DNA of 64,000 nt, taken from Octopus sinensis. Lineage: Eukaryota. The translations under genes and the position numbers were made by a program. The notes beneath the pieces were generated by a model. That model was not told the DNA's origin. It ran no database searches and was given only the letters and a program-made list of their open reading frames with translations. Positions 19,180-62,680 of this stretch are shown piece after piece (positions within the stretch are counted from its first letter, which is position 1; each line of letters begins with the position of its first letter). The stretch lies in contig NC_043005.1 of the NCBI RefSeq assembly GCF_006345805.1, positions 70,246,001 to 70,310,000 of the forward strand. The letters are read 5' to 3'.

Positions 19180-19735
19180 CATGTGTGTGTGTATGTATGT
19201 ATATGTATTGGATGGGTGTATGCGTATTGGTGTATGTATGTATGTGTATATATGTATGCATGTGTATATATATATGTATATATGTATTTACATGTGTATG
19301 TATGCATGTGTATGCATGCATGCGTATTATGTATGTGCATGTATGTGTACGTCTGTATGTATGTATGTGTATGTATGTGTATGTATGTACGTGTATGTCT
19401 GTATATATGTATGTGTATGTATGCATGTGTATGTGTATATGTATGTATGTGAATATATATGTATGTATGTACGCATGTGTATGTATGTGTATGTATGCAT
19501 TTGTTTGTATGTATGTGTTTGTATGTATGTGTACGTATGTATGCATGTGTATGCAGGTGTGTGTGCGTAAGTGCATGTCTGTATATATGTATGTGTATGT
19601 GCATGTATGTATGTGCAGGTATGTATATGTATGTGTATGTATGTATGTGTATGTTTGTATATGTATATGTGTGTATTTATGTGAGCGTATGTATGTGTGC
19701 GTATGTATGTGTGCGTATGTATGTGTGCGTATGTA
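19180..19735. repeat. Cryptic (TGTA/TATG/TG)n simple-sequence tract
   Basis: Read directly; source of the VCMY-type ORFs. Confidence 0.95.
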
Positions 19736-20397
19736 TAGAAATTATCCACAGCCCCTAATAGACCGTGCAATCCAACAAGCACTTACATTATGTATAGAAG
19801 ACCTGAGACAAACAAATCCAACACACAACCCACTTAACAATGAGGCCTTCAACACCATACTACAAAGTACAGCCCTACTAAAGGGGGACCCAAAGGTGAA
19901 CCGGATCCTGGAAACACACACCATCTTTAAATGTAAAGGCAACCAAAATCCTTAAAAAAGATTTTAGCCCAAGCTAAACTGCACTTAACAACAACCACAA
20001 AACCAGCAGTTAGAAAATGTGGAAAGCCCAACTGCCGAATCTGTGTCATCTTGGTAGAAGGTTCAGAATTCACATTAGAACAAGGCCATCAGTTTACTAT
20101 CAGAACAAACTTCACCTGTTCATCGGAAAACTTAATTTACGTCTTAACATGCGCAGGGTGCAATAGGCCATACAAAAAACAGCTTACGAAAAATGATGGC
20201 GGTGCATGAATCCCAAATTAGAAATCCTGAATACAGGAAAATACCAGTCAGCGGACACATAGATAGATGTGCTTCAAATAAAAATCCCAAATTCACAACT
20301 TGCCCACTTTACAAATTCAGTGACAGCGTTACTTTCACTCAACGATAAAATAAAGAACTTTATTTCATTAGAAAATTCGGGCCAAGTTTGAACACCC
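19735..20397 (+). mobile_element. Penelope-like element, C-terminal linker and GIY-YIG endonuclease remnant
   Basis: YRNYPQPLIDRAIQQAL...KCGKPNCRIC...NFTCSSENLIYVLTCAGCNRPY...KELYFIRKFGPSLN, with frameshifts and stops. Confidence 0.85.
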
Positions 20398-26340: not shown

Positions 26341-28470
26341 GTGCAAGTCAAGCGTGACGCAGAGACAGAAAAACAGGATGCTCTGTTAGCATACGCTGAA
26401 CCTGACAACAACACCACCTCCACCACCATCAACATCGACAACAGCAACAAATACAAAACAAAGGTCGCAAGGCCAAGCTCCGTCAACACCATCAATGAGT
26501 CCACCACCAACACCGACAACAACACTATGGCAGAATCTGCTACTAAAACTGCTATCCCTACTAAAGACATCGCCACCAATAACAATACCAACATCACCAT
26601 CACCGCCACCAAAGACCGTGCCGTCAATGCTACTAATACCACTAACACCACCGCCGTCACCAAGAACGACAATAACAACAACAACAACAACAACAACGAC
26701 GACGACGACAACAACAATTCCCTTCAACCACTGCTCACTCCATCACCAACAAGTGAAAAAATAACGACGACAAGCAAACGAAATGCCGAAATTTGCGCTA
26801 ATGCAGGACTAAATTACGCAGGCAATTTTCCACCCCTTGCTAGTTGCATAATCAGCAACCACAAACCTACAACCAACACCCCTGCCATTAACACCAACAC
26901 CACCGGCAGTAACAACAATAACAAAACAACAACAAACTTCGCCGAGGCGATAAAAGAAAAGGTAACAAAAGTTTCGTTTACTACACAACAGATTAAAGAT
27001 TGCAGAAACCTTATTACAAATGAAAACGGAAAAATACTCTTACACATACCCCAAGACATACTGAATGAGGAGAAAAAAAAGACAATTGTATATAAAATCA
27101 CAAATAAAAAAACTAAAAGTCCAGAAAAGGCAAGCACAGACAAAGTCGAAAAGTGCTTACGCCCCATCTGGGGATACAAGGATTGTGTGACTTGGGCGAA
27201 CAAGTTCGCACACGTACAGGTGGTTTTTCAGAATGAAGAGTTGGCGAAGAAATTCTCAACGATAACCCTTCATTCTGATGAACTAACGATGACATCGAGT
27301 TACCTCGGCCAGAAGGTGACGAAGGTCATTATCAGTGGTGTCCCCCAAGTGACTACAACACTGTGGATAACATCCGCCTTAACATCCGAAATGGAGGACT
27401 TAAACATCCTAGATATCGGTGTTTCGGAAAACAAGGACTGGCTGGGAAAGAGAATAGAGTTCCTCTTCCACATAAGTCAAGAGGACATAAATAAAATCCC
27501 CACGCACGTACATCTTGAGGATGGCCGCAAGTTATACGTAGTAGTCGAGGGCAGAAGGCCACGATGCTATACATGTGGCAGTGAGGCACACCTCAAAAAG
27601 GAGTGCAAATCTGCCGCAAAATTACAACAACAACAGCCACAGGAAAAATCACAAAAGCCAGCATTATTGCCCACACCACAATATGGACAGCTAGTCAAGA
27701 AGCTGTATGCGGAAATGCAGGAAAAACAACAAAGAACAAGCCAACCCAACCAAACAACACCAACACCAGCGCCAAGAACAGAATCATCACCACCAACAAC
27801 AAATAAACCAATTCCAACACCAAGAATAACAACGAAGAAGACAAGCACCAAGGATGTAGGAGAGACAATAACCACAACAAACCCCCCAGCAACACCCTCC
27901 CCGCGCACCACAACAATATCTACAACCGCACAAACACACCCAAACGCTTTACCCTTGCCCCCTGCTGATTCGTCAGACTTTTCATATAACGATGAAAGTT
28001 CGACAGAATGGCAAATAGCCACAGGGGGTAAAAGAAAAAGATCAAGAAAAACCAAACAAGAAATCGCAACCAAAGCAGGGAGATACCTGAACCCTGAAAA
28101 CTCCATACACAACAAAACAAGCACCAACACCACAAAAACAATGCTATCAGCGATAGACACCAAAGACTCCAAACTAATGGAGTACATCACAGGATACACA
28201 AACATTTGTGAAGATGACTTTAAAAATAGCAATCATCCACGCACTACACCACCCAAACACATCAAAATACTACACATCACACAAACACAACACCACCAAC
28301 TCAAAGCCCTCTTCCCAAATGTTGTAGGGGGTTTCCAGAAATATCTGTCCCAAAACTATATAAAAAACTTCTCGAAGACACATCAAAGAACGAGGAAGCC
28401 AAAACTTTCGACACAAGTAAGTAACTCTCTGTACTTTCATTTGTGTGTTTTAAAGCACACACCCCAATAA
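26341..28470 (+). CDS. LINE ORF1p (gag-like nucleic-acid-binding protein); first in-frame ATG at 26527
   Basis: Open frame of 709 codons; zinc knuckle CYTCGSEAHLKKEC (C-X2-C-X4-H-X4-C); T/N/P-rich low-complexity flanks. Confidence 0.85.
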   Translation: MQVKRDAETEKQDALLAYAEPDNNTTSTTINIDNSNKYKTKVARPSSVNTINESTTNTDNNTMAESATKTAIPTKDIATNNNTNITITATKDRAVNATNTTNTTAVTKNDNNNNNNNNNDDDDNNNSLQPLLTPSPTSEKITTTSKRNAEICANAGLNYAGNFPPLASCIISNHKPTTNTPAINTNTTGSNNNNKTTTNFAEAIKEKVTKVSFTTQQIKDCRNLITNENGKILLHIPQDILNEEKKKTIVYKITNKKTKSPEKASTDKVEKCLRPIWGYKDCVTWANKFAHVQVVFQNEELAKKFSTITLHSDELTMTSSYLGQKVTKVIISGVPQVTTTLWITSALTSEMEDLNILDIGVSENKDWLGKRIEFLFHISQEDINKIPTHVHLEDGRKLYVVVEGRRPRCYTCGSEAHLKKECKSAAKLQQQQPQEKSQKPALLPTPQYGQLVKKLYAEMQEKQQRTSQPNQTTPTPAPRTESSPPTTNKPIPTPRITTKKTSTKDVGETITTTNPPATPSPRTTTISTTAQTHPNALPLPPADSSDFSYNDESSTEWQIATGGKRKRSRKTKQEIATKAGRYLNPENSIHNKTSTNTTKTMLSAIDTKDSKLMEYITGYTNICEDDFKNSNHPRTTPPKHIKILHITQTQHHQLKALFPNVVGGFQKYLSQNYIKNFSKTHQRTRKPKLSTQVSNSLYFHLCVLKHTPQ

Positions 28471-28474
28471 AATC

Positions 28475-29956
28475 ATGGTCAAGATTGGTTGTGTGAATGC
28501 GCGTGGCTTGGGGTCTCCTTGGAAACAAGGATACCTCCTAAATGACATCAAGTCACATGATTTGGGAATCATAGCCATAAGTGAGACCAGACTCCACGAG
28601 CCACGGGCCCTAAAATCCATGTTTGGCGGACAGTTTAACATTTATTTCGCTCCCTGTCTGCTGAGGATGGGCGGTAGTGGCACCGCGGTACTTTTTCACA
28701 AGAGCCTGGATCTCGAAGTCAAGACGATATTCGTAGACCCGGAGGGTAGACTGATCGTTCTGGATGTTGACGGCAGCAATGGGTGCGATTTTCGACTCGT
28801 ATTAGTCTACGCACCGCCCTTAACAGGTCGGGCGGATTTCTTTCGACGTCTAGAAGTATTCTTGGGAACGTCTCGTCCTTTACTCTTAGTGGGGGATTGG
28901 AATGCTACCTTGGACACGCATGTAGACTACGTGGGTAGAGACAGAAACAGAAGGGGATGCAAATGCCTCAGAGACCTGCTCAGACGATTCCAACTGTCTG
29001 ACAGGTACCGACTCGACCACCCAAATGCACCAACGTGGACATGGAGCAACCGCAGTGGGTCGTCGAGATCGTATCTAGATAGGATACTGTGTAGGACAGT
29101 AGACAGGGATAACTTAGGATGTCCACAATTCCACACAGTCAGCTACACGGATCACAAATTGGTGACGTGTATGCTAGACTTAGATAAGGCACATAGACAG
29201 GGTCCTGGGTACTGGAAACTGAACGCATCATTTCCGTCCAGACAAGTTTTCAGAGACCGGATTAGCACACTAGTAAAGAGGGGTTTGACGGGAGCCATCA
29301 TCAACAACAAATGGTGGTTTGCCCTCAAGAGAGCAGTAAAAGCAGAAGCGATTAGGTACAGCAAAGCACTAGCCATAGATAGAAATAGAGTAGAGGGTGA
29401 GCTAGTTAAGAAGCTAGAAGAGGCCATTAGAAGCGGCATCGCATCCGACGTTTTGGCGGCGAGGTTGGCCCTCGACCAACACTTCAACGCCAAACACGAA
29501 GGATGTGCTGTCAGAGCTAGGATGCGTGCTCTAAGGAACGAAGGTGTTGGAGCCGCGAGAGAGGCCCGGGTGGCAGAGGCGCAACAGGGCAACAAAGCCA
29601 CCATTCGGTCACTGGTAGATGAACAGGGGCGCGAATTGCTCGAGCCAAGTAAAATGTGTGAGGCCTTTCAGCAGCATTTTGCCCGACTGTTCGGGACGAG
29701 TGGAGGGCAAGAACGTAGGGTGGACTTCAGTGCCTACCTACATAGCCTGCCACGACTCTCGACAAGAAAGGCAGGGTGCTGCGAAGGTGCCATCACGGCG
29801 GCGGAAGTGCAGGAAGCGATAGCAGAATGCTCGAGGGACAAATCACCGGGTTTGGATGGTCTACCCTACGAGTTTTACAATTGTATACCAGACTGGTTTG
29901 GAGACGTCTTGGCAGCTGCAACTGGCAGCAAAACGGGAGCATACCCGGTTTTGTGA
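28475..29956 (+). CDS. LINE ORF2 part 1: apurinic-like endonuclease and linker (valid frame to ~29915)
   Basis: GCVNARGL, IAISET, LLVGDWN, SYLDRIL, TDHKLV, WKLNAS and KSPGLDG motifs. Confidence 0.92.
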   Translation: MVKIGCVNARGLGSPWKQGYLLNDIKSHDLGIIAISETRLHEPRALKSMFGGQFNIYFAPCLLRMGGSGTAVLFHKSLDLEVKTIFVDPEGRLIVLDVDGSNGCDFRLVLVYAPPLTGRADFFRRLEVFLGTSRPLLLVGDWNATLDTHVDYVGRDRNRRGCKCLRDLLRRFQLSDRYRLDHPNAPTWTWSNRSGSSRSYLDRILCRTVDRDNLGCPQFHTVSYTDHKLVTCMLDLDKAHRQGPGYWKLNASFPSRQVFRDRISTLVKRGLTGAIINNKWWFALKRAVKAEAIRYSKALAIDRNRVEGELVKKLEEAIRSGIASDVLAARLALDQHFNAKHEGCAVRARMRALRNEGVGAAREARVAEAQQGNKATIRSLVDEQGRELLEPSKMCEAFQQHFARLFGTSGGQERRVDFSAYLHSLPRLSTRKAGCCEGAITAAEVQEAIAECSRDKSPGLDGLPYEFYNCIPDWFGDVLAAATGSKTGAYPVL

Positions 29957-31905
29957 GTCGAGGAGCTGTAACACTGCTGAAGAAAGATCCAAACAAGGGA
30001 AACATTATAGATAACTTTAGACCAATCACGCTGCTCAATGCAGACCTGAAAATTTTGACAAAGGTGTTAGCCAAGAGGTTGGCGCTTGCCATCGAGAAAC
30101 TGGTCGACAACGCACAAACGTGCGCCGTGCCGGGCCGGAGCATCCATGACAACCTCCATCTAATGCGCTACATCATAGACAGGGTAGTTAACGAACCTGG
30201 CATGGGTGGGGCCCTGATCAACTTGGATCAATCGAAAGCCTTTGATAGGGTAGACCATCGATACTTGGAGGCAGTCCTGAGAGCGGCTGGTTTCGTGCCC
30301 GTCTTCCGCGGCTGGATAGCTGCCTTGTACAGAGGCATCCGTTCGGTAATTCGCGTAAATGGACATCTATCGAGACCTTTCGACATTGCAGGTTCGGTCC
30401 GTCAGGGATGCCCCCTCTCGGCGCTTCTATACGTATTGACTCTTGAGCCACTACTGCGGAAGCTGGCGACTCTAAGGGGCATCCTGCGAGAATTGGGATG
30501 CGGGACGAGCGTGTCTGCATACGCGGACGACGTCACCGTCATAGTGTCAAGCCACGAGCACATCGAGCGGGTCGGCGAGACACTGAAAGACTACGAAGCG
30601 GTGACAGGAGCAAAAATCAACCGGGAAAAGTCAGTGGGCTTGCGGCTCGGCACCTGGAGAAGCAAGCCTATGCCGTCCACCAGTACCTCCGTCGTGGAAC
30701 GCTGGACAGACGGCCCGGTTGAGTTGCTCGGGGTCTGGTTCGGTCCGGACCTCCAAATGGAGAAGAACTGGAACGAGATAACGAGTAGGGTGGTCACTCT
30801 CGCCCAGCAATGGGCCGAGAGGAAACTGTCCCTAAAAGGTCGGGCGGAGGTGGTGAACGCGTACATCGCGTCCATCATCTACTACCGCCTGACCGTCGTA
30901 CCTTGTCCCGACCCTACCATCACCAAACTAGAACGCATCCTCTTCCGCTTCTTGTGGAAAGGATGCGTCCCGATGGTCAGGCGATCCATTTGCTGTCAAC
31001 ATCCGTTAAAAGGAGGGCTGGGCATTCCGTGGTTGACGATGCGCAGACACGCGCTGAGACTGCGACATCTCCGGCTCTATGTAGACGACGGTGAACAGGT
31101 GTGGTCGCCGTTTGTGAGGCACGCATTCCCGCAACTCGTCTCCATGACCGAACTACAGTCGTGGATCAAACAGAGGCCGAGGAAGGGCGAATGGCACCGC
31201 GAGTGTCTCGTTGCTCTCAAGCAACTCTGCCGTCCCGGGTCGACCTTGAGTGACTTCAACACAACCAAAGCATTCTATAGGGGATTAGTGGAGGGGAGGT
31301 ACGACGACGAGCTCGAGGCAAACCTGGGCGTCGACGAGGAATACCTAACCCGCCTGTTTCAAACGACTTTCGGCCCGGGACCTATGGACAACTTCCAGAG
31401 ATCCTTGGCCTGGCGGTGCTACCGAGAAGCGCTACCCGTTCGGGATAAGCTCTATAGGCATGGCTCGAGAAACACGGAGCCGACCTGCCCGAGATGCGGG
31501 CAGAGCGACGAAACCGCTCTGCACGCAATCGTGCAGTGTCCAGCAATTTCCGACCTGTGGGCTTATGTCGAACGACTGCTGTCACGTGTTGGACGTGTCG
31601 GTTTATCAGCCGAGTCTATCGTTAATATCGTCACGCCTCCTTCCTTCAAACGGGAAGGAAGAGCTATTTTTATCATACTTGTGGCTATGGCGAAAGAATG
31701 TATCTGGTGGACGCGCCTGAAAGGATTAGAGACAAACACTTTCCTCTCTGGTCAATCTCTCATCAACTTCTTCAAGTATCACTTGAAGAGGAAAGTGAGA
31801 GTAGAGAGGCAAGTTTTGTCTAGTGAATGTTTTAAAAAAAGATGGGTGAATGTAGCAAGGATGGCAAGTATGAATGACGAAGCCACCTTGACTATGATTC
31901 TATGA
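29776..31905 (+). CDS. LINE ORF2 part 2: reverse transcriptase and C-terminal zinc finger (valid frame from ~29918; ORF2 is frameshifted)
   Basis: FRPITLLNADLKI, DQSKAFDRV, QGCPLS, YADDV, GGLG, CPRCGQSDETALHAIVQC. Confidence 0.92.
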   Translation: MLRRCHHGGGSAGSDSRMLEGQITGFGWSTLRVLQLYTRLVWRRLGSCNWQQNGSIPGFVSRGAVTLLKKDPNKGNIIDNFRPITLLNADLKILTKVLAKRLALAIEKLVDNAQTCAVPGRSIHDNLHLMRYIIDRVVNEPGMGGALINLDQSKAFDRVDHRYLEAVLRAAGFVPVFRGWIAALYRGIRSVIRVNGHLSRPFDIAGSVRQGCPLSALLYVLTLEPLLRKLATLRGILRELGCGTSVSAYADDVTVIVSSHEHIERVGETLKDYEAVTGAKINREKSVGLRLGTWRSKPMPSTSTSVVERWTDGPVELLGVWFGPDLQMEKNWNEITSRVVTLAQQWAERKLSLKGRAEVVNAYIASIIYYRLTVVPCPDPTITKLERILFRFLWKGCVPMVRRSICCQHPLKGGLGIPWLTMRRHALRLRHLRLYVDDGEQVWSPFVRHAFPQLVSMTELQSWIKQRPRKGEWHRECLVALKQLCRPGSTLSDFNTTKAFYRGLVEGRYDDELEANLGVDEEYLTRLFQTTFGPGPMDNFQRSLAWRCYREALPVRDKLYRHGSRNTEPTCPRCGQSDETALHAIVQCPAISDLWAYVERLLSRVGRVGLSAESIVNIVTPPSFKREGRAIFIILVAMAKECIWWTRLKGLETNTFLSGQSLINFFKYHLKRKVRVERQVLSSECFKKRWVNVARMASMNDEATLTMIL

Positions 31906-32379
31906 ACCATAAAAATTAATACAGAGAGTTGATTATTTGCAAAAAAAAAAAAAAAAAGAAATATAACATGTGACTTCATTGACCGAGGTTACCGTGGTCT
32001 TTTCCGTAGGCTTTTCTTTCCACGGGTAAACCTCACCTGTCCTCCCCTTTACACTTCATATTGACATTTCTGTGATAACGATCCCTATTATTCATTTTTT
32101 TCTTCCCCCCTTTTTTTGTCCTTTTTCTTTCCTTTTACGATCCCTTTTGATCGAAAACCACCACTCTCTTTTTTTTTTTTTACCCCCAAAAGAAAAGCTC
32201 TACCTTGTAATTTGTTCTATCTGTGTGCAGCCCTGTGTGGCTAATAAAGAAACATATCTATCTATATATCTATCAGCTATCAATCAATCTACCTATATCT
32301 ATCTGTCTATCTCCCCCTCTCTCTTCGCATATATATATATATGTGTGTGTGTGTGTGTATATATATATATGTGTGTGTG

Positions 32380-35700: not shown

Positions 35701-35974
35701 CCCACAATCATGTAATATCTTGTCAGAAAATCTAAAAAATCTACATTGAGTGGGGATAGCAGTTTCTAAGAAACAATTTGATTTCCTGTTGTCCTAGGTC
35801 CTAGATTAATTTATATTACGGCAAGAAACTCACAAGAGCGTAGTAATATCAAGATCCCTACTTCACCAAAGCCTAATCACAATAGAATATCTATAGAAAA
35901 TGTTATAATACTGGCGGCGCCCCTGTATGGCCACCACCTTTGAACCGAAACACATAAAAGTACAAAAGAATATA

Positions 35975-36026
35975 GATTTATAGATAGATAGAAAGAAAGA
36001 AAGAAAGAAAGAAAGGTAGATATAGA

Positions 36027-36121
<95 letters not shown>

Positions 36122-36145
36122 GTAGGTAGTGAGATAGATAGATAA

Positions 36146-36209
<64 letters not shown>

Positions 36210-36218
36210 GTAGATAGG

Positions 36219-36269
<51 letters not shown>

Positions 36270-36270
36270 T

Positions 36271-36358
<88 letters not shown>
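35975..36358. repeat. (GATA)n/(GACA)n/(GAAA)n microsatellite, ~385 bp
   Basis: Read directly. Confidence 0.98.
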
Positions 36359-40699: not shown

Positions 40700-40772
<73 letters not shown>

Positions 40773-40781
40773 CACACTTAT

Positions 40782-41085
40782 ATACAAAATCAATTAAACC
40801 TATTTTATATCACTGTTGCACAAAGTTTTGTGATACCACCTTTCTGTATAGCTAAGAGTTCATTAGAGATTAAAAGTGCCTTTACGTGTCACATATGTAT
40901 GTGTGTATGCCTCCATGAATATATATATATATATCAATATACGTGAATACATACGTACGTACACACATACATACAAAATCAATTAAACCGATTTTATATC
41001 GCTGTTGCACAAAGTTTTGTGTTACCACCTCGCTATATATCCAAGAGTTCATTTCAGATTAAAAGTTCATTTAGGTGTTATATAT
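40782..41085 (+). repeat. Two ~115-bp direct repeats (period 189) separated by TA/CA tracts
   Basis: ATACAAAATCAATTAAACC...CTGTTGCACAAAGTTTTGTG at 40782 and 40971. Confidence 0.9.
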
Positions 41086-41395: not shown

Positions 41396-42285
41396 TTGCA
41401 GAATGGGAATAGCTGGAATGAAATGGAATGCAGAATGGGGAGTGCTACAATAATATATATTGCATAATGGGGAGAGCCACAAATGAAATAGACTGCAGAA
41501 TGGGAAGAGCTAGATTGAAATAGACTGCAGAATGGGAGAGCTACAATAATATAGACTGCAGAATGGGAAGAGCTAGAATGAAACAGACTGCAGAATGGGA
41601 AGAGCTAGAATGAAATAGGCTGCAGAATGGGAAGAGCTAGAATGAAATAGACTGCAGAATGGGAAGAGCTAGAATGAAATAGACTGCAGAATAGGGAGAG
41701 CTAGAATGAAATAGACTGCAGAATGGGGAGAGCTACAAATGAAATAGACTGCAGAATGGAGAGAGCTACAATGAAATAAACTGCAGAATAGGGAGAGCTA
41801 GAATGAAATAGACTGCAGAATGGGAAGAGCTAGAATGAAATAGACTGCAGAAAGGGAAGAGCTAGAATGAAATAGACTGCAGAATGGGAAGAGCTAGAAT
41901 GAAATAGACTGCAGAATGGGAAGAGCTACAAATGAAATAGTCTACAGAATAGGGAGAGCTAGAATGAAATAGACTGCAGAATGGGGAGAGCTACAAATGA
42001 AATAGTCTACAGAATAGGAAGAGCTAGAATGAAATAGACTGCAGAATGGGAAGAGCTAGAATGAAATAGACTGCAGAATGGGAGACCTACAATGATATAG
42101 ACTCCCCAATGGGGAGAGTTACAAATGAAATAGACTGCAGAATGGAGAGAGCTAGAATGGAATCGACTGCTGAATGGGAAGAGCTACAATAATATAGACT
42201 GCACAAAATGAAATAGACTGTAAAATAGGGAGAGCTAGAATGAAATTGACTGCAGAATGGGAAGAGCTAGAATGAAATTGTTGCA
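41396..42285 (+). repeat. 32-bp minisatellite, ~28 copies (consensus GAATGAAATAGACTGCAGAATGGGAAGAGCTA)
   Basis: Period measured at 41641/41673; degenerate copies at both edges. Confidence 0.95.
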
Positions 42286-51592: not shown

Positions 51593-52770
51593 TATCAGAT
51601 CATCCCATATGTTCTGTCCGATTTTACCTTTTTTTAAATAAAATGAAATTTAATGGTATTTTAGAATGTTTAATAGAATTAAAAATTAGTTTTATGCATT
51701 TGTGTACATTTAAACTGATTAACTATTATTTTACAGAATAATAGAATTAAAATGTCTTTGATTAAAACCCTTTCTAACATAAAAGTGTCCAAAGAGCATT
51801 TAAGGCACATATTGCTTAATGAGTACAAAAAAGAAAATCTGCAGCCGAAGCGACTCGAAACATACACTCAGTTTATGGGAAAGAATGCTTGAATGAAAGA
51901 ACTTCCTGAAGATGTTTGCAAACACAGAAGTGGAGATTTCAGCTTAGTTCACACCATACAACTGTTCATCGGCATCTTCAACATCTTGGAAAGGTTCCTA
52001 AACTTGGAAAATGGGTGCCTCATGAATTGTCCGAAATCAACCGCAAATCCCGAGTTGACATCTTCTATCCTCTCCATTCTCGCGAACTCATTTCACCCTT
52101 TTCGGATAGACTTGTGACTGGTGAGGAGAAATGGATCTTCTGTCGAAATGTTAAACGTCGTAAACAGTGTCTTGGTAAAAGGGAAAAAGCTCGACGACAA
52201 CTTCGAAGGGAATTTCATGGAGAAAAGGTTCTTCTCTCTATCTGTTGGAATTTCAAGGGAGTAATTCACTTTTAATTGTTACCACCTAATGCAACAATCA
52301 ATGCTCAGTCTACTGTCAGGAAGTAGAGCGTTTGAACCATGCTTTTAAGAAAAAAAGACCCGCTTTAGTGAATCGAAAAGGAGTGATGTTTTATCAGGAC
52401 AATGTGCGACCCCACACTGCAAAGATCACATTACAGAAGATGGAAGAGCTTCGTTGGGAAAAAATCCTCATCCACCTTATTCTCCTGACCTTGCTCCTTC
52501 AGACTACCATTTGTTTCGTAGTTTACAGTATAATTTGGGATACATAACTTTCGCAAGCAATGAGGTGGTCGAAACTGACATTTCAGAGTTCTTCAATTTG
52601 AAATCAAAATAGTTTTACATTGATGAGATTTAAAAGCTTGTAAAGAGATGGAAGGAAGTCATAGATAATCAGGGATAGTACATTGATCATTAAATCCCAA
52701 TTATACATAACATTTGATCACTTGTTTTTTTAATTCAAAATTTTGACTGAACTTATGGGATAACTTAATA
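51593..52770 (+). mobile_element. Decayed mariner with both TIRs and TA duplication
   Basis: Left TATCAGATCATCCCATATGTTCTGTC versus right reverse complement TATTAAGTTATCCCATAAGTTCAGTC; WVPHEL, LVTGEEKWI, YQDNVRPHT and PPYSPDLAPSDYHLF motifs with frameshifts. Confidence 0.92.
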
Positions 52771-57230: not shown

Positions 57231-57673
57231 CTAACATAAAGATACACAGACACAAACAGAGAGAGAGAGGAGATTGTTTAGGGGGTCGTAAATAAACAAA
57301 TACCGGTTGTGAAGCAATGGTGGAGACAAACGGAAACACAAATATGCATAGGTGTATACATATGCATGGAAAATATACATACATACATACATACACACAT
57401 AAATATGCATCTATATATATATATATTCGCCTTGAATGTAATGATATATGTATAATATATGGCGTGTACTGGTACACCGGCGATTATAATTAATTTTATT
57501 GTATCGCATTTATCTTTGTTTACATATTCTCTCGATAAATTTCTGACCGTTAGACGATATACCACAATCCCCTATTTTGTCGGGTTTGTTCGGAGTCTGC
57601 GCAGTGTTTTGAATAGTTTAGAAAGAGCATTTCGATAGACGCACATGGATCTATTGGTATGGTCTTTCCATCG

Positions 57674-57764
57674 TTAACAGGAATCTTACTGAAGAGCCAG
57701 CCTGAGTAAATGAATACTATTTTTATTACTGAATTTGGCGAAACTGCAGTATAAGAAAAGTTAA
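57674..57764 (+). ncRNA. Type I hammerhead ribozyme, copy 1 (predicted cleavage after GUA, 57751|57752)
   Basis: Stem I TTAAC 57674-78 and TCTTA 57684-88 pair with TAAGA 57752-56 and GTTAA 57760-64; core CTGAAGA 57689-95; stem II GCCA(G) 57696-57700 / (T)TGGC 57735-39; GAAA 57740-43; palindromic stem III ACTGCAGT 57743-50; H17 = A. Confidence 0.9.
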
Positions 57765-58077
57765 GTTTGTAAAAGTTTTTAATTCTCATCTCACTAAATT
57801 TATCCAGCTATTGTGTATCTAGTACACTCTTCGCCTTGAATGTAATGATATATGTATAATATATGGCGTGTACTGGTACACCGGCGATTATAATTAATTT
57901 TATTGTATCGCATTTATCTTTGTTTACATATTCTCTCGATAAATTTCTGACCGTTAGACGATATACCACAATCCCCTATTTTGTCGGGTTTGTTCGGAGT
58001 CTGCGCAGTGTTTTGAATAGTTTAGAAAGAGCATTTCGATAGACGCACATGGATCTATTGGTATGGTCTTTCCATCG

Positions 58078-61000
58078 TTAACAGGAATCTTACTGAAGAG
58101 CCAGCCTGAGTAAATGAATACTATTTTTATTACTGAATTGGCGAAACTGCAGTATAAGAAAAGTTAAGTTTGTAAAAGTTTTTAATTCTCATCTCACTAA
58201 ATTTATCCAGCTATTGTGTATCTAGTACACTCTTCGCCTTGAATGTAATGATATATGTATAATATATGGCGTGTACTGGTACACCGGCGATTATAATTAA
58301 TTTTATTGTATCGCATTTATCTTTGTTTACATATTCTCTCGATAAATTTCTGACCGTTAGACGATATACCACAATCCCCTATTTTGTCGGGTTTGTTCGG
58401 AGTCTGCGCAGTGTTTTGAATAGTTTAGAAAGAGCATTTCGATAGACGCACATGGATCTATTGGTATGGTCTTTCCATCGTTAACAGGAATCTTACTGAA
58501 GAGCCAGGCTGAGTAAATGAATACTATTTTTATTACTGAATTTGGCGAAACTGCAGTATAAGAAAAGTTAAGTTTGTGAAAGTTTTTAATTCTCATCTCA
58601 CTAAATTTATCCAGCTATTGTGTATCTAGTACACTCTTCGCCTTGAATGTAATGATATATGTATAATATATGGCGTGTACTGGTACACGGCGATTATAAT
58701 TAATTTTATTGTATCGCATTTATCTTTGTTTACATATTCTCTCGATAAATTTCTGACCGTTAGACGATATACCACAATCCCCTATTTTGTCGGGTTTGTT
58801 CGGAGTCTGCGCAGTGTTTTGAATAGTTTAGAAAGAGCATTTCGATAGACGCACATGGATCTATTGGTATGGTCTTTCCATCGTTAACAGGAATCTTACT
58901 GAAGAGCCAGCCTGAGTAAATGAATACTATTTTTATTACTGAATTTGGCGAAACTGCAGTATAAGAAAAGTTAAGTTTGTAAAAGTTTTTAATTCTCATC
59001 TCACTAAATTTATCCAGCTATTGTGTATCTAGTACACTCTTCGCCTTGAATGTAATGATATATGTATAATATATGGCGTGTACTGGTACACCGGCGATTA
59101 TAATTAATTTTATTGTATCGCATTTATCTTTGTTTACATATTCTCTCGATAAATTTCTGACCGTTAGACGATATACCACAATCCCCTATTTTGTCGGGTT
59201 TGTTCGGAGTCTGCGCAGTGTTTTGAATAGTTTAGAAAGAGCATTTCGATAGACGCACATGGATCTATTGGTATGGTCTTTCCATCGTTAACAGGAATCT
59301 TACTGAAGAGCCAGCCTGAGTAAATGAATACTATTTTTATTACTGAATTTGGCGAAACTGCAGTATAAGAAAAGTTAAGTTTGTAAAAGTTTTTAATTCT
59401 CATCTCACTAAATTTATCCAGCTATTGTGTATCTAGTACACTCTTCGCCTTGAATGTAATGATATATGTATAATATATGGCGTGTACTGGTACACCGGCG
59501 ATTATAATTAATTTTATTGTATCGCATTTATCTTTGTTTACATATTCTCTCGATAAATTTCTGACCGTTAGACGATATACCACAATCCCCTATTTTGTCG
59601 GGTTTGTTCGGAGTCTGCGCAGTGTTTTGAATAGTTTAGAAAGAGCATTTCGATAGACGCACATGGATCTATTGGTATGGTCTTTCCATCGTTAACAGGA
59701 ATCTTACTGAAGAGCCAGCCTGAGTAAATGAATACTATTTTTATTACTGAATTTGGCGAAACTGCAGTATAAGAAAAGTTAAGTTTGTAAAAGTTTTTAA
59801 TTCTCATCTCACTAAATTTATCCAGCTATTGTGTATCTAGTACACTCTTCGCCTTGAATGTAATGATATATGTATAATATATGGCGTGTACTGGTACACC
59901 GGCGATTATAATTAATTTTATTGTATCGCATTTATCTTTGTTTACATATTCTCTCGATAAATTTCTGACCGTTAGACGATATACCACAATCCCCTATTTT
60001 GTCGGGTTTGTTCGGAGTCTGCGCAGTGTTTTGAATAGTTTAGAAAGAGCATTTCGATAGACGCACATGGATCTATTGGTATGGTCTTTCCATCGTTAAC
60101 AGGAATCTTACTGAAGAGCCAGCCTGAGTAAATGAATACTATTTTTATTACTGAATTTGGCGAAACTGCAGTATAAGAAAAGTTAAGTTTGTAAAAGTTT
60201 TTAATTCTCATCTCACTAAATTTATCCAGCTATTGTGTATCTAGTACACTCTTCGCCTTGAATGTAATGATATATGTATAATATGGCGTGTACTGGTACA
60301 CCGGCGATTATAATTAATTTTATTGTATCGCATTTATCTTTGTTTACATATTCTCTCGATAAATTTCTGACCGTTAGACGATATACCACAATCCCCTATT
60401 TTGTCGGGTTTGTTCGGAGTCTGCGCAGTGTTTTGAATAGTTTAGAAAGAGCATTTCGATAGACGCACATGGATCTATTGGTATGGTCTTTCCATCGTTA
60501 ACAGGAATCTTACTGAAGAGCCAGCCTGAGTAAATGAATACTATTTTTATTACTGAATTTGGCGAAACTGCAGTATAAGAAAAGTTAAGTTTGTAAAAGT
60601 TTTTAATTCTCATCTCACTAAATTTATCCAGCTATTGTGTATCTAGTACACTCTTCGCCTTGAATGTAATGATATATGTATAATATATGGCGTGTACTGG
60701 TACACCGGCGATTATAATTAATTTTATTGTATCGCATTTATCTTTGTTTACATATTCTCTCGATAAATTTCTGACCGTTAGACGATATACCACAATCCCC
60801 TATTTTGTCGGGTTTGTTCGGAGTCTGCGCAGTGTTTTGAATAGTTTAGAAAGAGCATTTCGATAGACGCACATGGATCTATTGGTATGGTCTTTCCATC
60901 GTTAACAGGAATCTTACTGAAGAGCCAGCCTGAGTAAATGAATACTATTTTTATTACTGAATTTGGCGAAACTGCAGTATAAGAAAAGTTAAGTTTGTAA

Positions 61001-61799
61001 AAGTTTTTAATTCTCATCTCACTAAATTTATCCAGCTATTGTGTATCTAGTACACTCTTCGCCTTGAATGTAATGATATATGTATAATATATGGCGTGTA
61101 CTGGTACACCGGCGATTATAATTAATTTTATTGTATCGCATTTATCTTTGTTTACATATTCTCTCGATAAATTTCTGACCGTTAGACGATATACCACAAT
61201 CCCCTATTTTGTCGGGTTTGTTCGGAGTCTGCGCAGTGTTTTGAATAGTTTAGAAAGAGCATTTCGATAGACGCACATGGATCTATGGTATGGTTTTTCC
61301 ATCGTTAACAGGAATCTTACTGAAGAGCCAGCCTGAGTAAATGAATACTATTTTTATTACTGAATTTGGCGAAACTGCAGTATAAGAAAAGTTAAGTTTG
61401 TAAAAGTTTTTAATTCTCATCTCACTAAATTTATCCAGCTATTGTGTATCTAGTACACTCTTCGCCTTGAATGTAATGATATATGTATAATATATGGCGT
61501 GTACTGGTACACCGGCGATTATAATTAATTTTATTGTATCGCATTTATCTTTGTTTACATATTCTCTCGATAAATTTCTGACCGTTAGACGATATACCAC
61601 AATCCCCTATTTTGTCGGGTTTGTTCGGAGTCTGCGCAGTGTTTTGAATAGTTTAGAAAGAGCATTTCGATAGACGCACATGGATCTATTGGTATGGTCT
61701 TTCCATCGTTAACAGGAATCTTACTGAAGAGCCAGCCTGAGTAAATGAATACTATTTTTATTACTGAATTTGGCGAAACTGCAGTATAAGAAAAGTTAA
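58078..61799 (+). ncRNA. Type I hammerhead ribozymes, copies 2-11 (one per unit)
   Basis: 58078-58167, 58481-58571, 58884-58974, 59288-59378, 59692-59782, 60096-60186, 60498-60588, 60902-60992, 61305-61395, 61709-61799; catalytic nucleotides intact in all. Confidence 0.9.
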
Positions 61800-61956
61800 G
61801 TTTGTAAAAGTTTTTAATTCTCATCTCACTAAATTTATCCAGCTATTGTGTATCTAGTACACTCTTCGCCTTGAATGTAATGATATATGTATAATATATG
61901 GCGTGTACTGGTACACCGGCGATTATAATTAATTTTATTGTATCGCATTTATCTTT

Positions 61957-61996
<40 letters not shown>

Positions 61997-62119
61997 TACG
62001 AAGAAAAGTGGGTCGCAAATTATATATGTACACACATACACACACACATACACACACATATGCACACCCTATTCTTGCCTTCACTCCTCCATTTCTCTCT
62101 TGCTCTCTTGCTTCTATTT

Positions 62120-62680
62120 CTAGCTTGTCTGCAATGTCCGGGGAATATGGTGGGCGGGGTATCGTTTCCCATTCAATTTGCTCCAGGCTTTGAAATGTCA
62201 TCCTCGCTGTATGTGGCCGGGCATTGTCTTGATGGAAGAACATTTTTCTCTTGAAACCAAAGGTGGTCGTTTTTCTTCTAGCGCAGGTGTCGATGAATGG
62301 CTGAATGACCAAATCCAAGCTTCACTGCTACTTCCTCAACAGTTACGATGGGATTTTATTCCACCAGGACTTGCAAGACCTCGTCGAGCTCTACAGATCT
62401 TCCAAGGTGAAGTTCGTCTTCTAAGGCTGTAGTTTCCGGTTCGGAAATTCTGGAACCACCGTTGACAGTGGTTTACGCTTATTGTACAATCTTCATATAC
62501 TGCATTAATATTCCTCGCATTTTCCGTTACGCTGTTGCTTTTATTGAACACATAAAGCAAAATATGCTGAATGTGCTCCATTGTCACTTCCAGTATAGGT
62601 TTGAAAAGATAACAGTTAAAATCGAACTGCATACCTCAATACGTGCACCAAGAATAAGTACATGATAAAATTACTAAGGA
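62120..62680 (-). mobile_element. Internally deleted, 3'-truncated mariner remnant
   Basis: MEHIQHILLYVFNK...CQRWFQNFRTGNYSL (HTH) joined at ~62285 to FFHQDNARPHTA...WETIPRPPYSPDIA. Confidence 0.85.

What the first reader, a model, noticed from the sequence alone, without database searches (positions are those of the whole stretch)
57426..61960. 404-bp satellite is a tandem array of 11 intact type I hammerhead ribozymes: candidate cephalopod retrozyme
Seen: every full unit contains TTAAC-aggaa-TCTTA CTGAAGA GCCAG...TTGGC GAA ACTGCAGT A|TAAGA-aaa-GTTAA. All conserved hammerhead core nucleotides (C3 U4 G5 A6 G8 A9, G10.1-C11.1, G12 A13 A14, A15.1-U16.1, H17) and all three helices are satisfied. 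Predicted cuts follow 57751, 58154, 58558, 58961, 59365, 59769, 60173, 60575, 60979, 61382 and 61786, so a + strand transcript would be chopped into ~404-nt monomers. Established: tandem type I hammerhead repeats of 150-450 bp (newt satellite 2, schistosome Sm-alpha, Dolichopoda pDo500, and the non-LTR retrozymes of cnidarians and bivalves) produce linear and circular RNAs. Inference: this is such a family in an octopus-like genome. I do not know of a described cephalopod example but cannot confirm novelty.
Basis: partly seen in the sequence, partly recalled or inferred. Interest (0 to 1): 0.96.

Follow-up and report, generated by a model that had tools for sequence, protein, structure and literature searches.

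The report
Hammerhead-ribozyme tandem repeat, octopod-like genome
An 11-copy, 404-bp tandem repeat in an octopus-like genome carries a complete self-cutting hammerhead RNA motif in every copy; this mobile repeat type (a "non-LTR retrozyme") is already known in mussels, corals and salamanders, so it is a new example, not a new kind.

Summary
The array runs 57426-61966, period 404, 11.3 copies, about 99% identical. Each of 11 units carries the same 90-91-nt type I hammerhead (HHR) motif on the + strand, with cut sites at exactly the listed coordinates.

A generic HHR descriptor finds these 11 sites and nothing else in 64 kb on either strand. Simulated background gives 4e-5 to 2.4e-4 such motifs per 404-bp unit.

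Rfam Hammerhead_1 aligns full length with every core base matched. It scores only 21.2 bits against a gathering score of 34, because helix II carries a 38-nt insertion.

Helix III is a 2-bp stem with a palindromic UGCA loop. Folding predicts that two neighbouring motifs pair through ACUGCAGU, a "double hammerhead" as in newt satellite 2.

Unit size, 34% GC, lack of coding capacity and the array layout fit the published non-LTR retrozyme definition. The array sits inside a (TA)n microsatellite, a target reported for some Penelope-like elements.

A LINE reverse transcriptase in the window is closest to Argonauta hians, which supports an octopod source.

No related copies, transcripts or cleavage data could be obtained, and the units are too alike to show covariation. 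I found no paper describing a cephalopod example. Verdict: credible new member of a known kind, moderate interest.

The parts
57426..61966 (+). Tandem array of 11.2-11.3 units of a 404-bp repeat (34% GC). The first unit is partial, starting at unit position 79 counted from the cut site. The last is partial, ending near unit position 175-180. The true right end lies at 61959-61966 and is ambiguous with the (TA)n run.
   Evidence: TRF. Unit alignment shows 9 variant positions, each private to one unit. GC.
57674..57764 (+). Type I hammerhead motif, copy 1 (cut after 57751). Parts: outer helix I stem TTAAC/GTTAA, internal loop AGGAA/AAA, helix I TCTTA/TAAGA, core CTGAAGA, helix II GCCAG/TTGGC with an AU-rich extension of about 34 nt, GAA, helix III AC-TGCA-GT, and A17.
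   Evidence: Rfam RF00163 alignment 57683-57757, 21.2 bits, E = 0.0038, model positions 1-45 of 45.
58078..58167 (+). Hammerhead copy 2 (cut after 58154). It has a 1-nt deletion in the T-run of the helix II 3' strand; 5 bp of helix II remain.
58481..58571 (+). Hammerhead copy 3 (cut after 58558). It has a C>G change just beyond helix II.
58884..58974 (+). Hammerhead copy 4 (cut after 58961).
59288..59378 (+). Hammerhead copy 5 (cut after 59365).
59692..59782 (+). Hammerhead copy 6 (cut after 59769).
60096..60186 (+). Hammerhead copy 7 (cut after 60173).
60498..60588 (+). Hammerhead copy 8 (cut after 60575).
60902..60992 (+). Hammerhead copy 9 (cut after 60979).
61305..61395 (+). Hammerhead copy 10 (cut after 61382).
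61709..61799 (+). Hammerhead copy 11 (cut after 61786).
57412..57426 (.). Left (TA)n run abutting the array. Read as half of the presumed microsatellite target.
61960..61993 (.). Right (TA)17 run abutting the array. Read as the other half of the presumed microsatellite target. Any target-site duplication would be hidden in it.

Best explanation
The array is a non-LTR retrozyme-type repeat. It is non-coding and AT-rich, with a 404-bp unit, and every unit encodes a type I hammerhead ribozyme on the + strand.

Proposed mechanism:
1. A multimeric + strand transcript forms. (Inferred.)
2. Helix III of a single motif is only 2 bp, and the model favours a competing UACUG/CAGUA pairing. The palindrome ACUGCAGU of two neighbouring motifs instead pairs into an 8-bp shared helix III, a double hammerhead. 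(Predicted by folding.)
3. Each ribozyme then cuts after GUA. This releases 402-404-nt monomers with 5'-OH and 2',3'-cyclic phosphate ends. (Inferred from hammerhead chemistry.)
4. A host RtcB-type tRNA ligase circularises the monomers. (Inferred from the coral, mussel and axolotl work in PMC7229834.)
5. The linear or circular RNA is copied by a reverse transcriptase supplied in trans, most likely from a Penelope-like element, and is inserted. (Inferred.) Here the insertion went into a (TA)n microsatellite. It may have entered as a multimer in one event, because the units are about 99.8% identical and every variant is private to one unit.

Shown: the array, the motif in all units, its rarity by chance, the dimer-favouring thermodynamics, and the (TA)n context.
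For: - Array and motif at the stated coordinates.
- All core nucleotides present, with a full-length alignment to Rfam Hammerhead_1.
- The descriptor hits only these sites in 64 kb. The chance expectation is 4e-5 to 2.4e-4 per unit.
- Helix III of 2 bp plus a palindromic 4-nt loop is the stated norm for metazoan type I HHRs in tandem repeats, which act as dimers (PMC4209133; PMC7229834).
- Two HHR domains co-fold at -39.3 kcal/mol against 2 x -16.3, through the ACUGCAGU duplex (-11.1 kcal/mol alone).
- In a 495-nt transcript spanning two motifs, that helix has pair probabilities of 0.92-0.99 and the competing pairing drops to 0.004 or less.
- Unit of 404 bp and GC of 34% fit the published ranges of 150-450 bp and below 45-50% (PMC7229834). 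Mussel units are 350-390 bp.
- No ORF above 79 aa, and no real protein relatives.
- It meets the operational 'active retrozyme' test of the 2026 preprint: TRF plus HHR descriptor plus MFE below -5 kcal/mol in at least two consecutive units.
- The array lies between two (TA)n runs, although such runs cover only 2.1% of the window. (TA)n is a reported preferred target of Naiad Penelope-like elements, and Naiad families occur in Octopus spp. (PMC8557442).
Against: - The Rfam score is below the curated gathering score (21.2 against 34 bits). The hit was not reported at all in the 64-kb and 4.8-kb scans.
- As a monomer, the hammerhead-compatible fold is 6.6 kcal/mol worse than the MFE, an ensemble fraction of about 1.6e-6.
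- Helix I (UCUUA/UAAGA) is weak and is not predicted in any fold.
- Helix II carries an insertion of about 34-38 nt where canonical metazoan motifs have a short loop 2. The usual loop 1-loop 2 contacts therefore cannot be recognised.
- The 404-nt RNA folds no better than shuffled sequence, whether linear or circular (z = -0.24 and -0.19). Published retrozyme circRNAs are described as highly self-paired.
- The units are too alike for any covariation or selection signal: variant density is 0.2% both inside and outside the motif.
- No second locus, no relative in another genome, no Penelope-like element in the window, and no transcript data.
Confidence: 0.72

Rival explanations
1. Relic or silent ribozyme. 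The motif is a true hammerhead by descent, but this family or this locus no longer cleaves efficiently or is not transcribed. The array would then behave as an ordinary minisatellite that grew by unequal exchange.
For: - Weak helix I, a 2-bp helix III and a long helix II insertion.
- The thermodynamic model disfavours the monomeric active fold.
- Sub-threshold Rfam score.
- Penelope-like-element HHRs with similar dimer architecture show low in vitro activity (PMC4209133).
- No recognisable promoter and no transcript evidence.
Against: All 11 cores are intact, and the units are about 99.8% identical. The array is therefore very young or recently homogenised, and it had little time to decay. The dimer fold is strongly predicted. 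Weak monomer activity with good dimer activity is the documented behaviour of amphibian retrozymes (PMC7229834).
Confidence: 0.15
2. Chance look-alike. An AT-rich satellite unit happens to satisfy the hammerhead consensus, and amplification copied it 11 times.
For: - The 11 copies are a single independent observation.
- The simulated rate of 5e-8 to 3e-7 per base-strand, extrapolated to a genome of a few gigabases (an assumed size), implies hundreds to about a thousand chance matches.
- The same loose DNA pattern gave 2 and 1 chance hits in coding DNA of metagenome and prokaryote collections.
- The first-stage reader selected this from many windows.
Against: The chance of a match falling in one given 404-bp unit is 4e-5 to 2.4e-4. 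The details go beyond the descriptor and match the known family habit: an outer helix I stem beyond an internal loop, a palindromic loop 3, G10.1-C11.1, and unit size and GC in the published range (PMC4209133).
Confidence: 0.06
3. Part of an autonomous element. The unit is a tandemly reiterated pseudo-LTR of a Penelope-like element whose ORF lies elsewhere or was lost. It would then not be an independent non-autonomous family.
For: - Penelope-like elements carry type I HHRs in their pseudo-LTRs, form tandem structures and prefer microsatellite targets (PMC4209133, PMC8557442).
- The 2026 preprint derives non-LTR retrozymes from pseudo-LTRs (10.64898/2026.07.22.740005).
- The (TA)n context of this array.
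Against: No RT or GIY-YIG ORF lies next to the array or anywhere in the window. The only RT belongs to an APE-type LINE 25 kb away. Eleven uninterrupted units without an ORF is the retrozyme layout. Metazoan Penelope-like-element HHRs are usually minimal, lacking helix III, whereas this one has a canonical-type helix III.
Confidence: 0.07

Closest known systems
Non-LTR retrozymes of invertebrates, especially Mytilus galloprovincialis (Cervera & de la Peña 2020, PMC7229834)
   Same: Head-to-tail repeats of a few hundred bp (mussel 350-390 bp; here 404). Low GC, non-coding, one type I HHR per unit on one strand, array sizes from dimers to tens of units. Mollusc host. The loop 1/loop 2 tertiary-contact nucleotides are not recognisable in the mussel motifs either.
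   Different: No detectable sequence relationship was tested or found. Helix II here carries an extension of about 34 nt. The predicted RNA is not unusually self-paired. Expression and circularisation are shown for the mussel and untested here.
Newt satellite 2 and axolotl retrozyme HHRs (Epstein & Gall 1987; Forster 1988 double hammerhead; PMC7229834)
   Same: Tandem ~330-350-bp units. Type I HHR with a very short helix III capped by a palindromic tetraloop. Efficient cleavage needs two motifs pairing through an extended helix III. The same is predicted here.
   Different: Vertebrate host, up to about 1e5 copies, conserved loop 1-loop 2 contacts and a short helix II. Here only one 11-unit locus is seen, and genomic abundance is unknown.
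Minimal and atypical HHRs in the pseudo-LTRs of Penelope-like elements (Cervera & de la Peña 2014, PMC4209133)
   Same: Type I topology, dimer-dependent design, longer helix II and shorter helix I (4-5 bp) than canonical motifs. Microsatellite insertion bias of the carrier elements (PMC8557442).
   Different: Those motifs sit in repeats flanking an RT/GIY-YIG ORF and mostly lack helix III altogether. Here there is no ORF, and there is a canonical 2-bp helix III with a tetraloop.
Rfam RF00163 Hammerhead_1
   Same: Full-length alignment to model positions 1-45, with all conserved positions identical.
   Different: Scores 21.2 bits, under the 34-bit gathering score, because 38 nt sit where the model expects about 8.
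Schistosome Sm-alpha and Dolichopoda pDo500 satellite
   Same: Repeated DNA families of invertebrates that encode type I HHRs (PMC2837043 for pDo500).
   Different: From established knowledge, Sm-alpha is SINE-like with a Pol III promoter. No tRNA-like part was found here. pDo500 is a ~500-bp satellite conserved across a genus, whereas conservation could not be tested here.

Membership tests
Hammerhead ribozyme (catalytic core, Hertel numbering) | Conserved core: C3 U4 G5 A6 N7 G8 A9, G12 A13 A14, A15.1-U16.1, H17 (not G) | tested here: met
   CUGAAGA ... GAA A...U A in all 11 copies. Identical to the Rfam consensus at these columns.
Hammerhead ribozyme (catalytic core, Hertel numbering) | Three helices around the core; type I means helix I is open and helices II and III are closed | tested here: met
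   Helix I has 5 bp plus a 5-bp outer stem. Helix II has 5 bp (G10.1-C11.1) plus an extension. Helix III is only 2 bp plus a UGCA loop as a monomer, or 8 bp as a dimer.
Hammerhead ribozyme (catalytic core, Hertel numbering) | Mg2+-dependent site-specific self-cleavage 3' of position 17 | not testable with these tools
   Needs in vitro transcription.
Rfam RF00163 Hammerhead_1 | Covariance-model score at or above the 34-bit gathering score | tested here: not met
   21.2 bits, E = 0.0038 in a 131-nt scan. No hit in the 64-kb gathering scan or the 4.8-kb E<=10 scan. The shortfall coincides with a 38-nt insertion in loop 2.
Canonical metazoan type I HHR (PMC4209133) | Helix III of 1-2 bp capped by a small palindromic loop, allowing a double hammerhead | tested here: met
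   A-C/UGCA/G-U. The intermolecular duplex is -11.1 kcal/mol, and its pair probabilities are 0.92-0.99 in a two-motif transcript.
Canonical metazoan type I HHR (PMC4209133) | Helix I about 6 bp and helix II about 4 bp, ending in loops with conserved tertiary-contact nucleotides | tested here: inconclusive
   Helix I has 5 bp before the internal loop AGGAA/AAA. Helix II has 5 bp before an internal loop, then an AU-rich hairpin in place of a closing loop. The contact nucleotides could not be assessed.
Non-LTR retrozyme (PMC7229834; 10.64898/2026.07.22.740005) | Tandem repeat with a unit of about 150-450 bp, from dimers to large multimers | tested here: met
   Period 404, 11.3 copies.
Non-LTR retrozyme (PMC7229834; 10.64898/2026.07.22.740005) | [quoted passage not shown] | tested here: met
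   11 of 11 full units. MFE of -16.3 kcal/mol.
Non-LTR retrozyme (PMC7229834; 10.64898/2026.07.22.740005) | Low GC (below 45-50%); no LTR, PBS, PPT or coding capacity | tested here: met
   GC of 34.4%. The longest ORFs are 79, 59 and 53 aa, with no real homologues. The flanks are microsatellite, not LTRs.
Non-LTR retrozyme (PMC7229834; 10.64898/2026.07.22.740005) | Transcribed and processed into linear and circular monomer RNAs | not testable with these tools
Non-LTR retrozyme (PMC7229834; 10.64898/2026.07.22.740005) | Monomer circRNA highly self-paired | tested here: not met
   Circular MFE of -79.6 kcal/mol against shuffles at -78.6 +/- 5.1 (z = -0.19), with 61% of bases paired. The linear form gives z = -0.24. 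This is a descriptive feature, not a strict criterion.
Non-LTR retrozyme (PMC7229834; 10.64898/2026.07.22.740005) | Dispersed multi-locus family that co-occurs with autonomous Penelope-like elements in the genome | not testable with these tools
   Only one locus in the window. No Penelope-like-element ORF in the window. The literature reports such elements in Octopus spp. (PMC8557442).
Non-LTR retrozyme (PMC7229834; 10.64898/2026.07.22.740005) | Target-site duplication longer than 4 bp, when present | tested here: inconclusive
   Both junctions lie in (TA)n, which hides any duplication.

The most novel reading that the evidence does not exclude
This locus may be a fresh genomic footprint of one-step, rolling-circle reverse transcription of a hammerhead circRNA into a (TA)n target by Penelope-like-element machinery in a cephalopod.

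What fits this reading:
- Eleven near-identical units.
- Only private variants.
- Array ends at arbitrary phases relative to the cut site.
- A UACAUAU microhomology at the 3' junction.

If true, it would imply a currently active retrozyme-and-partner system in octopods. It would also add an HHR variant with a long helix II arm that curated models miss.
Probability: 0.25. Interest if true: 0.55.

Novelty: new member of a known kind. Interest (0 to 1): 0.35.

Why it matters
It would add cephalopods to the animals known to carry hammerhead-bearing tandem retroelements, and so to the animals likely to make abundant small circular RNAs. It is also a concrete case that the curated Rfam threshold misses because of a long helix II arm, so surveys based on that model probably undercount such elements. 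The clean insertion into (TA)n, with almost identical units, makes this a convenient locus for testing two open questions: whether whole arrays are laid down in one retrotransposition event, and whether Penelope-like elements supply the machinery. None of this changes the current picture of the class. It extends it.

Tried and rejected
1. Rfam at gathering threshold on the whole window, and at E<=10 on 4.8 kb: no hammerhead was reported. The only hits were microsatellite-driven mir-297/mir-466-type matches at the array borders. The hit appears only in a 131-nt scan with laxer filters.

2. Related copies through pseudo-proteins, all without a real relative:
- Exact look-up of the 79-aa (- strand, spans the HHR) and 59-aa (+ strand) ORFs.
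- Word-indexed homology search of the 79-aa ORF.
- Full phmmer search against 1.84 billion representatives. Its five hits are unrelated repetitive proteins.

3. DNA pattern CTGANGAGYY-N(20-50)-RRCGAAACTGCAGTA:
- JGI metagenomes: 2 hits.
- GTDB genomes: 1 hit.
- IMG/VR: 0 hits.
The two metagenome hits lie in one non-repetitive coding sequence and are chance matches. The GTDB hit, on an archaeal MAG contig, was not inspected; one hit is about the number expected by chance. These collections hold no cephalopod genomes.

4. Other copies of the unit in the window: only low-complexity matches.

5. A second ribozyme on the - strand: there is no CUGANGA box and no Rfam hit.

6. A tRNA-derived SINE origin: no tRNA-like sequence. 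The A-box and B-box resemblances I saw by eye were weak and too far apart, so I dropped them.

7. A Penelope-like element next to the array: Pfam scans of flanking ORFs found only a Mos1-type HTH and a Transposase_1 fragment.

8. Selection signal: variant density is the same inside and outside the motif, and there are too few variants to use.

9. Literature: no paper in the library links hammerhead ribozymes or retrozymes to a cephalopod repeat.


Full report
**Observation**

Tandem Repeats Finder reports a single array at 57426-61966 with period 404, 11.3 copies, 99% matches and no indel percentage of note. They share the architecture TTAAC-AGGAA-TCTTA-CTGAAGA-GCCAG...TTGGC-GAA-ACTGCAGT-A|TAAGA-AAA-GTTAA.

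Cut-to-cut monomers are 402-404 nt. An alignment of the units shows only nine variant positions, each private to one unit, and five of them are 1-2-nt deletions in short runs. Two variants fall in the hammerhead, both in or next to helix II. None falls in the core.

**Is it a hammerhead, and is it more than chance?**

In Hertel numbering the motif has C3 U4 G5 A6 A7 G8 A9, G10.1-C11.1, G12 A13 A14, A15.1-U16.1 and A17. Helix I is UCUUA/UAAGA, continued beyond an internal loop by UUAAC/GUUAA.

The eight bases ACUGCAGU are a perfect palindrome and cannot form a four-pair hairpin. In a single motif, helix III is two pairs closed by UGCA.

A generic type I descriptor was run on the window. It requires helix I of at least 4 bp, helix II of at least 3 bp, helix III of at least 2 bp, a loop 2 of up to about 70 nt, and the conserved core. 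It finds these 11 sites and no other on either strand. On 20 Mb of first-order Markov sequence with the window's composition it hits 6 times, and once with helices as good as observed. That gives 2.4e-4 and 4e-5 expected per 404-bp unit, both strands.

Extrapolated to a genome of a few gigabases (an assumed size), these rates imply hundreds to about a thousand chance matches. The weight of the evidence therefore lies in the motif sitting inside a tandem unit of the right size. The eleven copies count as one observation.

Rfam gives nothing at gathering threshold on the window, and no ribozyme in a 4.8-kb scan at E<=10. A 131-nt scan with laxer filters aligns RF00163 Hammerhead_1 over its full length, positions 1-45. 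Every conserved column is identical, the score is 21.2 bits and E = 0.0038. The gathering score is 34 bits. The alignment places 38 nt where the model expects about 8, in loop 2, which is the obvious cause of the shortfall. I could not re-score a trimmed sequence to prove this.

**How it probably works**

For one 91-nt motif, the nearest-neighbour model prefers a fold in which UACUG (including C3-G5) pairs with CAGUA (loop 3 to A17). That fold is -16.3 kcal/mol. The best hammerhead-compatible fold is -9.7 kcal/mol.

Two motifs together fold at -39.3 kcal/mol through an 8-bp ACUGCAGU/ACUGCAGU duplex, which is worth -11.1 kcal/mol on its own. In a 495-nt transcript that spans two neighbouring motifs, this shared helix has pair probabilities of 0.92-0.99, and the competing pairing drops to 0.004 or less.

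This is the double-hammerhead arrangement. Cervera and de la Peña describe it as the norm for metazoan type I motifs in tandem repeats: a short helix III of 1-2 bp with a small palindromic loop, poor cleavage as a monomer and efficient cleavage as a dimer (PMC4209133; PMC7229834, for axolotl).

I therefore expect multimeric + strand transcripts to be cut into ~404-nt monomers with 5'-OH and cyclic-phosphate ends. By analogy with coral, mussel and axolotl, these would be circularised by a tRNA ligase (PMC7229834). Those last steps are inference.

Points against an efficient ribozyme:
- Helix I is AU-rich and is never predicted by the energy model.
- The distal helix II arm replaces the usual loop 2.
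- The whole 404-nt RNA folds no better than shuffles, linear or circular (z = -0.24 and -0.19).

**Context**

The unit has 34.4% GC. It has no ORF longer than 79 aa, no tRNA-like part and no second copy elsewhere in the window. There is no CUGANGA box on the - strand.

The array begins at unit position 79 and ends near position 175-180 relative to the cut site, so its ends are unrelated to the ribozyme site. It is bounded on the left by a (TA)n run at 57412-57426 and on the right by (TA)17 at 61960-61993. (TA) runs of six or more repeats cover 2.1% of the window, so a random insertion would land in one about one time in fifty.

Craig et al. report (TA)n as a preferred target of Naiad Penelope-like elements. 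They note that this bias hides target-site duplications, and they list Octopus spp. among the hosts (PMC8557442). A 2026 preprint argues that non-LTR retrozymes derive from the pseudo-LTRs of Penelope-like elements (10.64898/2026.07.22.740005). The (TA)n setting fits mobilisation by such machinery, but it is suggestive only.

No Penelope-like-element ORF is in the window. The only reverse transcriptase belongs to an APE-type LINE at 26341-31905. The array's right neighbour is a Mos1-type mariner remnant.

**Source organism**

The LINE RT ORF finds its best named relative in Argonauta hians (64% identity), with a cuttlefish protein at 37%. An unnamed 71% hit lies on a 3-kb contig of NCBI assembly GCA_024449705.1. 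This supports an octopod-like cephalopod genome but does not name the species.

**Comparative evidence**

None could be obtained.
- Exact and homology searches with the unit's pseudo-ORFs failed.
- A degenerate HHR pattern found three hits across the metagenome and prokaryote collections and none in the viral one. The two metagenome hits lie in one non-repetitive coding sequence and are chance matches. The prokaryote hit, on an archaeal MAG contig, was not inspected; one hit is about the number expected by chance.
- No animal genome or RNA-seq collection is available here.
- Within the array, variant density is 0.2% both inside and outside the motif, so there is no selection or covariation signal.

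**Comparison with what is known**

The published definition of non-LTR retrozymes is: tandem units of 150-450 bp, low GC, a type I HHR in each unit, and no LTR, PBS, PPT or ORF. They are described as widely but patchily distributed among metazoan phyla, with species-specific sequences. This element meets every sequence criterion (PMC7229834). It also passes the operational pipeline of the 2026 preprint.

The nearest described relative in kind is the mussel retrozyme (350-390-bp units). The nearest in ribozyme behaviour is the newt and axolotl dimer-dependent motif.

The differences are the long helix II arm, the unremarkable folding of the full RNA, and the host group. Full-text searches found no paper describing a hammerhead repeat or retrozyme in a cephalopod. 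That library omits much subscription literature, so this is absence of evidence only.

**Verdict**

It is a new member of a known kind. The interest is moderate (0.35) and rests on three points:
- It is a first cephalopod example, as far as I can tell.
- It is a variant that Rfam's threshold misses.
- It is a very young array cleanly inserted in (TA)n, which could serve to test one-step multimer insertion and dependence on Penelope-like elements.

Noticed in passing
window 26341-31905 (+): A LINE-type retrotransposon with three ORFs: ORF1 of 709 aa with a weak zf-CCHC match, an APE endonuclease ORF at 28475-29956, and an RT plus zf-RVT ORF at 29776-31905. The RT ORF is in a different frame and overlaps the APE ORF by 181 nt, so ORF2 appears frameshifted. 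GC in the 28001-32000 bin is about 50% against about 35% around it. The best named relative is an Argonauta hians protein at 64% identity.
   Followed up: partly
window 62100-62632 (-): A mariner/Mos1-type transposon remnant immediately right of the array. The HTH_48 domain scores E = 1.4e-16 at 62336-62632. A C-terminal DDE-like piece is readable by eye around 62100-62290, and the element is internally deleted.
   Followed up: partly
window 51916-52275 (+): An ORF fragment with a Transposase_1 (partial DDE) match, E = 1.7e-6. This is another DNA-transposon remnant.
   Followed up: no
window 41397-42278 and 40730-41085: Two other tandem repeats: a 32-bp unit organised in a 193-bp higher-order period (about 25 and 4.6 copies, 86% matches), and a 189-bp repeat at 1.9 copies. 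Neither carries a hammerhead by the descriptor.
   Followed up: partly
window 57334-57453 and 61938-62070: Sub-threshold Rfam hits to mir-297, mir-466, mir-1277 and similar families flank the array. They lie on (TA)n and (ACAT)n microsatellites and are low-complexity artefacts.
   Followed up: yes
window 57426-61966: All nine differences between units are private to one unit, and five are 1-2-nt deletions in short runs. This pattern could partly reflect long-read consensus errors, so the true divergence may be even lower and the copy number may not be exact.
   Followed up: partly
window 58962-59365 (one unit) against the rest of the window: CpG observed/expected is 1.26 in the unit against 0.82 in the rest of the window. 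The sample is small, but it is consistent with a young or unmethylated repeat.
   Followed up: no
window 35972-36358, 19181-19736, 312-423: Long microsatellites: (ATAG)97, a roughly 550-bp (TGTA/TGTG)n tract, and (AGA)38. They generate most of the window's long spurious ORFs.
   Followed up: no
L001 11978-12045 and L002 891-958: Two marine metagenome contigs share a homologous protein-coding stretch that satisfies the loose CTGANGAG...CGAAACTGCAGTA pattern. There is no tandem repeat, and both are judged chance matches.
   Followed up: partly
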